Positions 1 to 23,118 of a stretch of DNA of 24,649 nucleotides are shown in pieces. Under the pieces are notes generated by a model, which was given only the letters and a program-made list of their open reading frames with translations, ran no database searches and was not told the DNA's origin. The first letter of the stretch is position 1. Every line of letters starts with the position of its first letter. Origin of the DNA: Ginkgo biloba (Eukaryota; Plantae; Ginkgophyta); assembly GCA_024626585.2 (NCBI GenBank), contig JANKJI020000002.1, forward strand, positions 50,457,394 to 50,482,042, in the 5' to 3' direction. The translations under genes and the position numbers were made by a program.

Positions 1-219
1 ACACTAACGATCAACATAAATAAGACAAGAGAAAGAATAAAAGAAAAGGGAAGATGTCTGATTGAGGAAGGATGACGTAGAAAATCGACAACCAATGCGA
101 AAGATAAGAGACAAATAAGTGACAAATACAATATGTGGAGGTCAATAAAAGATAGGGGGAAATGGAGAGATGATGGTTTGAACTAAAGTGAAGTAAAAGT
201 GGTAGGTGGTCATGTTGCA

Positions 220-1640
220 TAAATTATATATTTTACAGTGAGAGATTTTAGGGCTTGAGGAGCTAGAATAATTAAATGAGAGTCGTGACAACTTCACCAA
301 CTAGAAAAAGAAAGAGAGTTAGGTGGAGATTAGATGTAGGGAAGGAGGAACCTTCTAAAGACACATAATAACTAAGGGAGGATAAAATAAAGCTACCAAC
401 TTATTTTAGAGAAAAAATAGTGGTAGGTGAGAAGAAGGCTCAACACCTAAGAAAGCTAGGAGAAGTGGAAGAGAGGAGAATAGTCTAAGAGGAAGGAGAG
501 AGGAAATATTTAGGAGGGAGAAGGAGCTAAAGAGNNNNNNNNNNNNNNNNNNNNNNNNNNNNNNNNNNNNNNNNNNNNNNNNNNNNNNNNNAGAGAAGGC
601 TAAGAAAATATGCCAAACTTGAGGTAGCTTAGGAGGAAGATGAAATAAAGTAGCAAGAAGACTAGCTACCATGAGGAAAACTGGGATATAATCAAGGAGG
701 ACCAATAGTGGTGAGGAAATCAATGGTATAGGGACGACTATGTAACAACCACCTAGTAAGTGAAAGGAGAAGTAAGAAGAAGAAAGGAAGTAAGTATACC
801 ACTGACCATGAGGCAACTCGAGGAGATGAGTTTGGAGTACAAGGTGAAGTGTGCACTTTTAAGGTTCTAGTGTAGAGAAAAATGACCTCATTTATGATTC
901 CTCCTTTAAGGAGATGACTGTGTGAACCTCATCTATGGGAAATATATGCATGTAAGTTAGGAAATAGGCTAGTGGGAAGGATGCAATAAAATGCCACGGA
1001 ATCTAATATGAAGAATCTATTTATTTTGTAGATTTGAGTTCTCAAAGAATCCCTCCATATGCATATTTTTATTTTTGTATTTTTTCTTGAATTCTATGTG
1101 GTACGATGTAAAGATCCATGATAAAATAGGGTAAGGAAGGGAGAAGATCCTGGGAAGCAAGAAAACATCAGGTGATTTAGCAAGTCGACTATATCACCTT
1201 AAAGTGGATTCATGCAACCTTCTTTAATAGGATTGGGCATGTTAGATAGTATACTAATGACTACTTATTCCTATTAATGGGAAATAGGTGTGTGTGTGTG
1301 TGTGTGTAGACACAAAGAGAGAGTTATATCATTTTGTTAAACTCCATGTAGTATATTGTTCTTATTACCTCTTAGAGTTCGAATATATGTATGTCCTCAT
1401 TTTATATGAAGTTTATGCTTGTTATTTAAAATGGTAGGTCTTCTATGTATTTTTAATATATTTTATATATAGTAAGGTTATCTATACAGATTATAAGTTT
1501 CACTCCACCTTCTATTCAACTTACTCATCACACTCTATATGTTCCTCACTAATTATTCCAACTATCCTCACTCTTCCCTAAGTAATTCACTGTTAAATCC
1601 TTAATACCCCTATATTATACTCCATTAGTCTATTTATTAT
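220..1640. repeat. Dispersed repeat family A, copy 1 (unclassified TE fragment; probably extends to the window start and to ~2040)
   Basis: Colinear similarity by eye to 12600-14010, e.g. AATTAAATGAGAGTC, GTTAGGTGGAGAT, GTGGATTCATGCAACCTTCTTTA, TAATACCCCTATATTATA. Both copies carry related decayed minus-strand ORF pieces (LPPKLPQVWHIF versus LPPELPHVWHIF). Confidence 0.85.
1288..1307. repeat. (GT)10 microsatellite inside repeat A copy 1
   Basis: Read directly; the equivalent site in copy 2 (13685-13694) has (GT)5. Confidence 0.95.
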
Positions 1641-11207: not shown

Positions 11208-11396
11208 CTAGGGTGAGATTTTAACAGGGCTGCCATTGTGATGCAGAGGATCAGGACCTGAGGGCGCCTGTCTCAGCTCTGATTCTAATAAGCTGGGTTT
11301 CCCCTGGGAGGTCGAGCGATTGAATCCTGTAATTTGATCGCCTTCCTCTTCATGGGCAACTCTGTTAAATCCCACCTTCATTGATTTTTGGAGCAG
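11208..11396 (-). CDS. CLV3: CLE gene coding exon 3 (62 aa plus stop) containing the CLE domain
   Basis: Acceptor GTGTGTTGCAG| (AG at 11398-11397). Encodes LLQKSMKVGF...ESELRQAPSGPDPLHHNGSPVKISP*. Corresponds to ORF-track entry 11208..11432. Confidence 0.92.
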   Translation of the reverse strand: MLQKSMKVGFNRVAHEEEGDQITGFNRSTSQGKPSLLESELRQAPSGPDPLHHNGSPVKISP

Positions 11397-12164
11397 CTGC
11401 AACACACCAACAGATAAAGTCCCTTTAATCATGATAACATTTAATCATGATAATACGTAATTAGAAGAAGGAAAACAATGCTGCTCACAGTCCCAGAGAA
11501 AATTTTAAGCATGGATTCTCTTTTATTAACTATCATTGATTGACAAATATTTCTAACTTCAATAATTTATACAGTACAGGCCAATGTTTTAGTAATTTCT
11601 GTTAAATTTTGGTGAAAATTTGTATTATTTTTTATTAAAATTAAAAAATAACAAATATTCTAGAAAAAAATTCCCCTATTGACGAATCTTATTTCACAGA
11701 ATTTGTAAACAAATCTCATTTGACTGTATATATAGCCCACAAGTTTATTTTACAAAATTTGTAAACAAATCTCATTTGACTGTCTATATAGCCCACGAGT
11801 TTTTCCCTGCACAATACACAAGTATAAAATAGAAAAACTCAAAAACAGAAAATAGAGTAAGCAGAAAAGAAAATATACCATTCTGTGTTTTATTACTGGC
11901 AATGCCAAGTCATTTTCAATCTCTAAGCTTTGCATCTCTGTAATTTTACATATTCCACATGCAGCAAAATCCCTTAGTAAGCACCTCAATACTAAACTGA
12001 CTCCAATTTTATATATATGAATGAAAGAAACTTAGCAGTGGCTACAAGTCAACTAATTCTTCACCTGCCACCAAAGCTGGACGAAATGCGTGCAGCCATG
12101 AAGAACAAATAAAGAGCATGGCCATCACTAGAGCTGTAGTAATAATAAGCAGCAATCTCGCCAT
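11208..12164 (-). CDS. CLV3: CLAVATA3-like CLE (CLV3/ESR-related) peptide precursor; 3 coding exons (12164-12065, 11937-11879, 11396-11208), 348 nt, 115 aa
   Basis: Spliced by hand. Both introns are GT-AG (127 and 482 nt) with compatible phases (1, then 0), giving one uninterrupted ORF. It has a hydrophobic N-terminal signal peptide and a C-terminal CLE motif RQAPSGPDPLHH (Arabidopsis CLV3: RTVPSGPDPLHH), preceded by EL and followed by NGSP. CLE family membership is very secure; CLV3 orthology is inferred. Confidence 0.9.
11238..11273 (-). other. Predicted mature CLE dodecapeptide RQAPSGPDPLHH
   Basis: Matches the CLE consensus R-x-x-P-x-G-P-D/N-P-x-H-H/N; 10 of 12 residues identical to CLV3 RTVPSGPDPLHH. 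Confidence 0.93.
11424..11453. repeat. Short direct repeat TTTAATCATGATAA x2 near the intron 2 branch-point region
   Basis: Copies at 11424-11437 and 11440-11453, each containing the palindrome ATCATGAT. Confidence 0.8.
11689..11802. repeat. 56-bp tandem duplication (2 copies) in CLE intron 2
   Basis: ATTTGTAAACAAATCTCATTTGACTGT(A/C)TATATAGCCCAC(A/G)AGTTT starts at 11701 and again at 11757; about 4 mismatches over the whole unit. Confidence 0.95.
11879..11937 (-). CDS. CLV3: CLE gene coding exon 2 (59 nt): (E)MQSLEIENDLALPVIKHRM
   Basis: Acceptor AAATTACAG| (AG at 11939-11938) and donor ATG|GTATAT (GT at 11878-11877). It bridges the phase-1 end of exon 1 to the phase-0 start of exon 3 exactly, and lies inside ORF-track entry 11750..11989. 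Confidence 0.85.
12065..12164 (-). CDS. CLV3: CLE gene coding exon 1: signal peptide MARLLLIITTALVMAMLFICSSWLHAFRPALVA plus 1 nt
   Basis: ATG at 12164 in ATAATGGC context (A at -3, G at +4). Basic Arg followed by a long hydrophobic core. Donor CAG|GTGAAG with GT at 12064-12063. Too short to appear in the ORF track. Confidence 0.88.
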
Positions 12165-12322: not shown

Positions 12323-12330
12323 TATTTATA
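12323..12330 (-). promoter_or_regulatory. Candidate TATA box (TATAAATA) of the CLE gene
   Basis: Minus strand reads TTTCTCTCTCT-TATAAATA, about 160 nt upstream of the ATG, with a pyrimidine patch just 5' of it and YCAT/TCA initiator-like sequence about 25-30 nt downstream (~12300). Confidence 0.6.
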
Positions 12331-12490: not shown

Positions 12491-12590
12491 NNNNNNNNNN
12501 NNNNNNNNNNNNNNNNNNNNNNNNNNNNNNNNNNNNNNNNNNNNNNNNNNNNNNNNNNNNNNNNNNNNNNNNNNNNNNNNNNNNNNNNNN
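12491..12590. other. 100-N scaffold gap just upstream of the CLE promoter
   Basis: Exactly 100 Ns, a typical placeholder for a gap of unknown size. Confidence 0.95.
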
Positions 12591-14010
12591 GACCACATTT
12601 CCTGAAGTATATGTTTCAAAGAAAGAGATTTCAGGGATGAAGGAACCATAAGAATTAAATGAGAGTCATGAAGATTTCACCAACTAGGAAAGGTAGGAGA
12701 GTTAGGTGGAGATCAAATGTAGGGAAGGAGGAACCTTCTAGAGGAACACAGTAACTGAGGGAAGAGAAAATTAAGCTATTAACTTATTTTTGAGGGAAAA
12801 TAATGGTAGGTGAGAAGATGGCTTAGTGCCCAAGGCAACTGGGAGAAGTGGAATATATGAGAATAGTCCAAGATAAAGGAGAGAGGAAATATCTACGAGA
12901 GAGAAGGAGATAAAGAGGATACTCTGTGTGAGGAGAAAAGGAAGTGGACAAATACAGATCCAACCATAAGGGGAGAGAAGGCTGAGAAAATATGCCAAAC
13001 GTGAGGCAACTCAGGAGGAAGACAAAAGAAAGTAGTAGGAAGACCAGTTACCATGAGGCAAGCTAGGATATGGTCAAGGAGGACCAATAATAGTGATAGA
13101 ATCAATGGTATAGTTCCTATTGTGAGAGAACCACCTAGTAAGTGAAGGAGAAGGAAGGGGAAGCAAGCAGAAGAAAGGAATTAAGAAAACCACTGACTGT
13201 GAGGTAGCCTAAGGATATGAGTTTTGGGTACAAGGTGAAGTGTTCACTTATAGGGTTCTAATTATGGATAAAAGTGACCTCGCATGTATAATTCCTCCTT
13301 TAAGGAGATAATTGTGTAAACCCTATTTGTCGGGTGTATATGCATGTAAATCGAGAAATTGGCTAGTGGGAAGGATGTAATAAAATTTCATTGAATCCAA
13401 TGTGAAGATTCTATTTTTTTTCTAGATTTGAGTTCTGAAAGAATCCCTCCATACTCATGTTTGTATTTTTTTATTTATTATTGAATTATGAGTGGTACAA
13501 TGTAAATACCTATGAGAAAATAAGCTAAGGAGGAGTTAATATCCTGGGAAGTGGCCAAAATTAGGTGATTCATCAAATCAGTTGTATCACCCTAGAGTGG
13601 ATTCATGCAACCTTCTTTAGTATTATTGGGCATGTTAGATAGTATAGTAGTGACTACTTGTTCTTTTTATGAGAAAATAAGTTTGTGTGTGTGTAGACAC
13701 AGAGATAAAGTTATATCATTTTGTTAAACTCCATGTACTATATTATTGTTATTACCTCTTAGAATTATAATATATGTATTTCCTCATTTTCTATGTAGTT
13801 TATGTTTGTTATTTAAAATGGTAGGTCTTCTATGTATTTTTAATAGATTATATATATACTAAAGTTATCTATACAGATTATAGGTTTCACTTTACCTTCT
13901 ATTCACCTCGTTCATCACACTCTATATGTCCCTGACTAATTATTCTAACTCTCCTCACTCNNNNNNNNNNNNNNTAATACCCCTATATTATATTCCATTA
14001 TTCTATTTTA
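12591..14010. repeat. Dispersed repeat family A, copy 2 (same orientation as copy 1)
   Basis: See copy 1. It starts at a 100-N gap and ends on the right where the LINE fragment begins. Confidence 0.85.
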
Positions 14011-21788: not shown

Positions 21789-22959
21789 NNNNNNNNNNNN
21801 NNNNNNNNNNNNNNNNNNNNNNNNNNNNNNNNNNNNNNNNNNNNNNNNNNNNNNNNNNNNNNNNNNNNNNNNNNNNNNNNNNNNNNNNTATCATTACCAT
21901 TGGTCAATCTGGTCAAAGTCATTATGTTCACTGGTACACAAAATCTAAGCAACAACAAGTGGGATAGTTATTTATGCTAAAGAAAGTTATAAGGTATAGT
22001 TGGCCATGAAAACCTTAATCACCCCTATATATCTTTATTTTATTCTTTATGAGTAGGTCATGTTGTACTTCCATAGAGATGTAAACATATAAAATTTCTA
22101 GTGAAACCTTACTTTGTATTGATGTAGGTGATAGTGATATTGTTAAAACTACTACAAAGAAAAGAGAATGGTATGGGTGGAATTAAAAAGAATGAAGAAT
22201 GAGAAGAGGTGTGATATGGGAATATACTCTTCTTCTCCTAGTGTTTTGCATGACATGAAGATTTCCATACAACATGCAAAGGTGGGTGGTGGTGAGAGAT
22301 CTATATAAAACCTCTTCTCAAGAATAAATCTTTCTCTGACACAACTTGGGTATAGCCTGGGTCTAGGGGATATGATGGATAGGTGATTATGGAAATATTG
22401 GATTACATGTTCCCTCCCATCACCTAAAGAATGAAATAAATCTATCCTAGGGATTAACTTTCCACTAGATATTCATAGTTGTCAGGACATGTGAAACCTG
22501 GCTCCATCTTCTTTACAATACAAATAATTATATCGATTGACCAACTAAAGGCAACAAAGAGAGGAAGTTTATGCAAGTTGAGATGAATTTGATTGGTAGA
22601 TGCACCTACCTATGATGGATCATAGNNNNNNNNNNNNNNNNNNNNNNNNNNNNNNNNNNNNNNNNNNNNNNNNNNNNNNNNNNNNNNNNNNNNNNNNNNN
22701 NNNGTCTTTGAACTTTGTTGTAACCACTTATTGATGAATAAAAGAAACTAAAACTTTTTGTTTGCATGATTTTGTAAATTTTTTACTGCAAAAATTTTAA
22801 ATAAAATCATCGGCATAATTATTTATATGATTTACAAAATTCTTCTTTTTTGACTCACACATAGAAGCATTTGAGTTATTTCCTATTAACTAGAATAGGC
22901 ATGATATTACCATTTTCTTGAGCGAGCTTGAATGCATTCTCTCCAATCAACTCGATAAT

Positions 22960-23118
22960 TTTATAAGGACCAAGGCAAAGTGAATCAAATTTATGATGAG
23001 CCCTAAGATTTTCTTTGGCTTTGTTCAACATTAAGACCAAATCGTCCTATCAAAATTCCTTACAAGAAGCCTTTTGTTGAAACTCAACTTCATTTTGGCC
23101 TAATTTTTCTGAGAAAAC
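22960..23118 (+). repeat. Dispersed repeat family B, copy 2 (runs into an N gap)
   Basis: See copy 1. Confidence 0.65.

What the first reader, a model, noticed from the sequence alone, without database searches (positions are those of the whole stretch)
11208..12164. Intact three-exon CLAVATA3-type CLE peptide-hormone gene hidden among transposons
Seen: three minus-strand exons splice via GT-AG introns (phase 1, then 0) into a 115-aa secreted precursor ending ...ESEL-RQAPSGPDPLHH-NGSPVKISP. Established: CLV3, the shoot stem-cell-limiting ligand of the CLV-WUS loop, has the motif RTVPSGPDPLHH preceded by EL, a short C-terminal extension and three exons, whereas most CLE genes have intronless coding regions. 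The KHRM|LL exon 2/3 junction also recalls the NRKMM segment of CLV3. Inference: this is a CLV3 orthologue. If the host is a gymnosperm, as the TE landscape suggests, it bears on when the CLV3 clade arose, since from recall CLV3 orthologues have been hard to identify outside angiosperms. Small spliced genes like this are easily missed by annotation; the ORF track shows only fragments.
Basis: partly seen in the sequence, partly recalled or inferred. Interest (0 to 1): 0.92.

Follow-up and report, generated by a model that had tools for sequence, protein, structure and literature searches.

The report
CLAVATA3-type peptide gene, probable gymnosperm
This is an intact-looking gene for a small plant signalling peptide that carries the sequence marks of CLAVATA3, the brake on shoot stem cells in flowering plants; if the host is Ginkgo, as other notes on this genome say, that gene lineage is older than flowering plants, against the published model.

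Summary
Observation confirmed: three minus-strand exons, GT-AG introns (phases 1, 0), 115 aa, hydrophobic N-terminus, one R-type CLE motif. The three-exon layout does not single out CLV3: CLE40 genes share it, and a three-exon spruce gene, CLE191/272, was described in 2014. What separates them is sequence. Against 112 angiosperm CLV3/CLE40 contexts the gene has all four CLV3-type states and scores +45 bits; its last exon falls on the CLV3 side of an unrooted tree (98/85). By eye, spruce CLE191 has CLE40 states and the same 12-mer as an Amborella CLE40-type gene, while this gene also matches an Amborella CLV3-type gene outside the motif. Best reading: a gymnosperm CLV3 orthologue, placing the CLV3/CLE40 split before the seed-plant crown; a review of Hirakawa 2022 places it in angiosperms. 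A fern 'CrCLV3' is already named by motif alone. The scan had not noted this before.

The parts
12325..12330 (-). TATA-like element, 166 nt upstream of the ATG
   Evidence: consensus match only
12065..12164 (-). Exon 1: start codon and putative signal peptide (residues 1 to about 26, 12164-12087)
   Evidence: hydropathy; cleavage site inferred from the -3/-1 rule, SignalP not available
11938..12064 (-). Intron 1, GT-AG, 127 nt, phase 1
   Evidence: same phase in CLV3 and CLE40 genes
11879..11937 (-). Exon 2: variable region, ends in the basic junction motif
11397..11878 (-). Intron 2, GT-AG, 482 nt, phase 0; holds a 56-nt tandem duplication (11689-11802) and a competing acceptor at 11807
11208..11396 (-). 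Exon 3: variable region, CLE motif, 9-residue tail, stop codon
11274..11279 (-). Glu-Leu directly before the motif: CLV3-type flank
   Evidence: E at -2 in 40/47 CLV3 vs 1/65 CLE40; L at -1 in 44/47 vs 0/65
11238..11273 (-). CLE dodecapeptide RQAPSGPDPLHH (predicted mature ligand)
   Evidence: Ser5 in 44/47 CLV3 vs 0/65 CLE40
11211..11237 (-). C-terminal tail of the NGSP.K..P type
   Evidence: G at +2 in 38/47 CLV3 vs 2/65 CLE40

Best explanation
An intact CLE precursor gene on the CLV3/FON2 side of the CLV3-CLE40 pair, in a gymnosperm (probably Ginkgo) genome. Shown: the reading frame, the motif, and the CLV3-type flanks. Inferred from Arabidopsis CLV3: the signal peptide sends the precursor into the secretory pathway; proteases cut before Arg1 and trim the tail to a 12-13-mer; Pro4 and Pro7 are hydroxylated and Hyp7 arabinosylated; the peptide binds a CLV1/BAM-type LRR kinase on neighbouring cells and lowers WUS/WOX5 activity, limiting the stem-cell pool of the shoot apex. 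Evolutionary inference: this gene pairs with CLV3 and spruce CLE191/272 pairs with CLE40, so the duplication preceded the gymnosperm-angiosperm split. My odds: real CLE gene 0.95, CLV3-side orthologue about 0.75, gymnosperm host about 0.9, restrictive role in the shoot apex about 0.5; the confidence given is for gene, orthology and host together.
For: Four of four CLV3-type states, where no CLE40 row has more than one. +45 bits; leave-one-out CLV3 5 to 77, CLE40 -58 to -8. The same split appears in loci found with a class-neutral DNA pattern. CLV3 side of the tree, 98/85. Intron phases as in named CLV3 genes. By eye from paper tables: spruce CLE191 has SA before R and Thr5 and the same 12-mer as Amborella scaffold00022.262; the window's junction region matches Amborella scaffold00030.123 at 10 of 20 positions with one gap; Selaginella Sm408679 has SD and Ser5, so EL looks derived on the CLV3 side and Thr5 on the CLE40 side. 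Ginkgo WUS rescues Arabidopsis wus-1 (PMC5400392). All motif residues that are invariant in both classes are kept.
Against: The signal rests on about 36 columns and the tree is unrooted, with no gymnosperm row. Gln2 is a CLE40/spruce state (1/47 vs 18/65). Single states can switch: P0099 looks CLE40-derived yet has L and Ser5, P0132 is CLV3 with Thr5. Exons 1, 2 and the start of exon 3 score no better than shuffles against either class. No gymnosperm relative turned up (best 120 of 407 hits listed), and the spruce tables list no such gene. No expression data. Zhang 2020 filed the Amborella gene in another group; calling it CLV3-type is my reading. CLE signalling promotes rather than limits division in Marchantia and fern.
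Confidence: 0.65

Rival explanations
1. Single gymnosperm pro-orthologue: this gene is the counterpart of spruce CLE191/272 and is equally related to CLV3 and CLE40, which split later in angiosperms. It would act through BAM-type receptors, possibly promoting stem cells as CLE40 does.
For: Published model (PMC10610496 citing Hirakawa 2022). Shares Arg-Gln, an NG[ST]P.K tail, three exons and an Arg-Pro after the predicted cleavage site with spruce CLE191. Spruce tables show only one such gene. In an unrooted tree of angiosperm rows both readings put the gene near the central branch.
Against: Needs three near-fixed characters (-2, -1, 5) to converge twice: this gene on CLV3, spruce on CLE40. The spruce 12-mer is identical to an Amborella CLE40-type one. 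The junction region matches the Amborella CLV3-type gene, not spruce (by eye).
Confidence: 0.2
2. The host is a flowering plant and this is an ordinary, divergent CLV3/FON2 orthologue.
For: I could not identify the host. All named relatives found are angiosperm.
Against: Several separate follow-ups on this genome name Ginkgo or a gymnosperm (unchecked). Best identity to any angiosperm row is only 67% over 33 columns.
Confidence: 0.07
3. A silent or mis-spliced copy: not expressed, or spliced mainly to the acceptor at 11807, giving a product without the CLE motif.
For: No reads could be examined. The acceptor at 11807 has a stronger pyrimidine tract (0.67) than the one at 11397 (0.50). A 42-codon upstream frame ends on the start codon. 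A repeat lies within about 430 nt upstream, across a gap.
Against: Open frame over three exons, canonical sites, conserved phases, intact motif and tail, TATA box; conservation on both sides of the exon 2/3 junction against the Amborella gene.
Confidence: 0.08

Closest known systems
CLV3/FON2 clade (Arabidopsis CLV3 in L022; poplar CLV3-type genes in L009 and L021; P0015, P0008, P0097)
   Same: Intron phases 1 and 0; EL before R; Ser5; NG(G)SP.K tail; basic junction at the end of exon 2; Ala3 occurs in 5/47; precursor length 115 vs median 103 aa.
   Different: Gln at position 2 (1/47); RM instead of RK at the junction; tail lacks the KP.TP ending; variable region not alignable to the eudicot/monocot set; host apparently a gymnosperm; function untested.
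CLE40/FCP1 clade (L008, L011, P0017, P0018, P0096)
   Same: Three exons, phases 1 and 0; GPDPLHH core; Gln2 common (18/65).
   Different: S[AE] before R, Thr5 and NNxP tail are all absent here; the log-odds falls far outside the CLE40 range.
Picea CLE191/CLE272 (MA_41364; PMC4016512)
   Same: Gymnosperm, three exons, starts Arg-Gln, NG[ST]P.K tail, 126 aa.
   Different: Spruce has SA before R, Val3 and Thr5 (CLE40 states, 1 of 4 CLV3-type states); this gene has EL, Ala3, Ser5 (4 of 4). Compared by eye only.
Amborella scaffold00030.123 (PMC7552357, supplement 12)
   Same: Acid-Leu before R, Ser5, NGSP tail, 10 of 20 identities around the junction.
   Different: Asn8 instead of Asp8, longer tail; filed in Group 3A by its authors; its introns are not given.
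Ceratopteris CrCLV3 and CrCLE40 (PMC11771683)
   Same: Non-angiosperm genes with CLV3-like and CLE40-like motifs.
   Different: Named by clustering of the 12-mer; I saw no flank or intron evidence; acts in the gametophyte and promotes division.

Membership tests
CLE family (R-type) | C-terminal 12-residue CLE motif starting with Arg, with Pro4, Gly6, Pro7, Pro9, His11 | tested here: met
   all 5 hits and the Atlas look-alikes (PF27922, lead only) are CLE proteins
CLE family (R-type) | N-terminal signal peptide on a precursor of about 100 aa | tested here: met
   hydropathy of exon 1 and 115-aa length; SignalP not run
CLE family (R-type) | Expressed, processed, secreted, bioactive peptide | not testable with these tools
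CLV3/CLE40 group | Two introns in the coding region, phases 1 and 0 | tested here: met
   predicted, not read-supported
CLV3/FON2 clade | Diagnostic flanks and motif: acid/amide-Leu before R, Ser5, Gly at +2 | tested here: met
CLV3/FON2 clade | RK plus hydrophobic pair at the exon 2/3 junction | tested here: inconclusive
   25/37 vs 0/64; the window has RM|LL, one base from RK; spruce CLE191 has a partial version, so it may be ancestral
CLV3/FON2 clade | Groups with CLV3 to the exclusion of CLE40 in a rooted tree with gymnosperm and fern genes | tested here: inconclusive
   unrooted exon-3 tree puts it on the CLV3 side; spruce, Amborella and outgroup rows had no reference and were left out
CLV3/FON2 clade | Expressed in the central zone; loss enlarges the meristem; WUS feedback | not testable with these tools
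   needs in situ work and genetics
CLE40/FCP1 clade | S[AE] before R, Thr5, NNxP tail | tested here: not met
CLE25/26, CLE1-7, TDIF and other CLE groups | Their motif types (PNG..IHN, SPGG..QHH, H-type SN) and the usual Lys-Arg entry | tested here: not met
   read against the motif tables

The most novel reading that the evidence does not exclude
This is an unreported true CLV3 orthologue in Ginkgo. Together with spruce CLE191 as the CLE40 orthologue it shows that the antagonistic CLV3/CLE40 pair arose before seed plants diverged, not in angiosperms, so the ligand side of the CLV3-WUS circuit is as old as mobile WUS, and CLV3 was lost, diverged or missed in spruce.
Probability: 0.5. Interest if true: 0.75.

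Novelty: new member of a known kind. Interest (0 to 1): 0.6.

Why it matters
The model summarised in PMC10610496 (from Hirakawa 2022) has gymnosperm R-type CLEs clustering with CLE40 and the CLV3-CLV1-WUS pathway arising by duplication within angiosperms. A gymnosperm gene with CLV3-specific flanks and the shared intron layout moves that date back and makes it testable: one can ask where the gene is expressed in the zoned Ginkgo apex, whether its peptide shrinks the meristem, and whether it acts on the Ginkgo WUS that already rescues wus-1 (PMC5400392). It adds no new mechanism; it is one more member of a well-studied family.

Tried and rejected
It did not call the stretch human-like, and I went on searching the exons by reference. 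The spliced model was searched exon by exon; the joined step was left out. Sequences seen only in paper tables (spruce CLE191/272, Amborella, Selaginella) have no reference, were left out of all scripts and alignments, and were compared by eye. Homologue search with exon 3 alone was blank; the hits suggest the word filter uses non-overlapping tiles, so that blank means nothing. Exact look-ups of window frames found nothing, so the host stayed unverified. Pfam (2025 copy) and PDB gave no useful hit for exon 3. Exon-wise profile and pairwise tests of the variable region were at shuffle level. Hirakawa 2022 is not held; a PMC id recalled for Whitewoods 2018 was wrong; Goad 2017 was not read. Rejected: three exons as proof of CLV3; CLE40 membership; chance motif.

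Full report
Observation. The gene model is in the sequence as described. Exons 12164-12065, 11937-11879 and 11396-11208 on the minus strand add up to 348 nt, 115 codons plus stop, with GT-AG introns of 127 nt (phase 1) and 482 nt (phase 0). Exon 1 encodes a short basic start and a hydrophobic stretch, as expected of a signal peptide (cleavage near residue 26 is my inference). The CLE motif at 11273-11238 is unique in the window and absent from 100 shuffles. A TATAAA lies 166 nt upstream. A second acceptor at 11807 with a stronger pyrimidine tract would end the frame after 18 codons. The model was searched exon by exon by reference; the joined step was left out.

Family. All five hits among 1.84 billion representatives are CLE proteins. 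One of them, P0005, comes from a three-exon gene with a CLV3-like tail, and a profile with it retrieved monocot and legume proteins, two of them named CLAVATA3.

[quoted passage not shown] A three-exon spruce gene, CLE191/CLE272, has been in print since 2014, listed next to CLV3 in a motif table (PMC4016512). So three exons place the gene in the CLV3/CLE40 group and no further.

CLV3 or CLE40. I collected plant loci with a class-neutral DNA pattern and 120 proteins with a mixed profile. Unsupervised clustering of 112 distinct motif contexts gave two classes that agree with all 16 source-named CLV3/FON2 and CLE40 proteins. Near-fixed differences are Glu at -2 (40/47 vs 1/65), Leu at -1 (44/47 vs 0/65), Ser5 (44/47 vs 0/65) and Gly at +2 (38/47 vs 2/65). 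The window gene has all four; no CLE40 row has more than one. Its log-odds is +45 bits, inside the leave-one-out CLV3 range (5 to 77) and far from CLE40 (-58 to -8). Gln2 is the main state that points the other way (1/47 vs 18/65). A maximum-likelihood tree of the C-terminal 36 columns puts exon 3 on the CLV3 side with 98/85 support, but it is unrooted, short, and has no gymnosperm row; a pro-orthologue with ancestral states could sit there too. Upstream of the motif, exon-wise tests show nothing above shuffles. RK plus two hydrophobic residues occurs in 25/37 CLV3 and 0/64 CLE40 precursors; the window has RM|LL at that junction.

The quartet, by eye. Sequences in paper tables have no reference and were left out of the scripts. 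Spruce CLE191 has Ser-Ala before the Arg and Thr5, the CLE40 states, and its 12-mer is identical to that of Amborella scaffold00022.262. Amborella scaffold00030.123 has Asp-Leu, Ser5 and an NGSP tail, and matches the window around the exon 2/3 junction at 10 of 20 aligned positions with one gap (pattern D..L...K.R.L.L..S.KVG). For a fixed alignment that is about 3e-7; since I chose the alignment, the true chance is some orders higher. Selaginella Sm408679 has Ser-Asp and Ser5, which suggests EL is derived on the CLV3 side and Thr5 on the CLE40 side. Three characters thus pair this gene with CLV3 and spruce with CLE40. The states it shares with spruce (Gln2, the NG[ST]P tail) also occur in one or other angiosperm class and are best read as ancestral. 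If the host is a gymnosperm, this quartet needs the duplication to predate the seed-plant crown, unless the characters converged, which does happen singly (P0099, P0132).

Host. Not established by me. Exact look-ups failed. Earlier AI notes on this genome name Ginkgo twice and a gymnosperm several times, and the index places another finding 220 Mb away on the same piece. I take gymnosperm at about 0.9.

Mechanism. From established CLV3 biology (Table 1 of PMC8462819; PMC9434304): secretion, cleavage to a 12-13-mer, hydroxylation of Pro4 and Pro7, arabinosylation of Hyp7, binding to CLV1/BAM receptors, repression of WUS. The gene has every sequence element needed, and Ginkgo WUS rescues Arabidopsis wus-1 (PMC5400392). 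None of these steps is shown here. The sign of the effect is open: CLEs promote division in Marchantia and Ceratopteris, and the one Gnetum WUS pattern reported differs from Arabidopsis.

Prior art and novelty. The review PMC10610496 states, citing Hirakawa 2022, that the CLE40 cluster holds the gymnosperm genes and that the CLV3 pathway arose in angiosperms. Ten full-text searches found no gymnosperm CLV3 (for example), the spruce lists hold no Ser5/HH gene of this type, and no database protein among the best 120 hits matches this exon closely. Against novelty: a fern CrCLV3 and CrCLE40 were named by motif clustering (PMC11771683), which already hints at an old split, and I could not read the key phylogeny papers. 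Verdict: a real, probably unannotated new member of a known family that bears directly on a stated evolutionary model; interest 0.6.

Noticed in passing
window 12292-12164 (-): A 42-codon upstream reading frame starts 38 nt after the TATA box and its stop overlaps the gene's start codon (TAATG). It could be a uORF if the transcript starts before 12292.
   Followed up: no
window 11807 and 11689-11802: A T-rich competing acceptor 72 nt into intron 2, followed at once by a 56-nt tandem duplication (93% alike). Use of it would drop the CLE motif unless a weak donor makes a 66-nt in-frame cassette.
   Followed up: partly
window 215-1635 and 12598-14008: Two copies of a repeat of about 1.4 kb, 80-90% alike, 12.4 kb apart in the same direction, with strong purine skew; the CLE gene lies between them and the second copy begins just beyond the 100-N gap upstream of the promoter.
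   Followed up: no
window 12491-12590: Assembly gap: only about 330 nt of sequence is contiguous with the start codon, so the promoter context beyond is uncertain.
   Followed up: no
window 22879-23046 (-): Fragment like the SH3 domain of Ty3/Gypsy (Tf2-type) integrase, PF24626, E 3e-5, below the curated cut-off.
   Followed up: partly
L001 1026-1482; L057 194-793: Two unnamed three-exon CLV3/FON2-type genes in Logan contigs, called only as last-exon fragments; probably monocots. P0097 is the nearest neighbour of the window's exon 3 in the tree (84/67, weak).
   Followed up: partly
P0099 (Dovyalis caffra): A CLE40-like precursor (poplar-type flank and tail) that has Leu at -1 and Ser5, a likely case of convergence on CLV3 states.
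   Followed up: no
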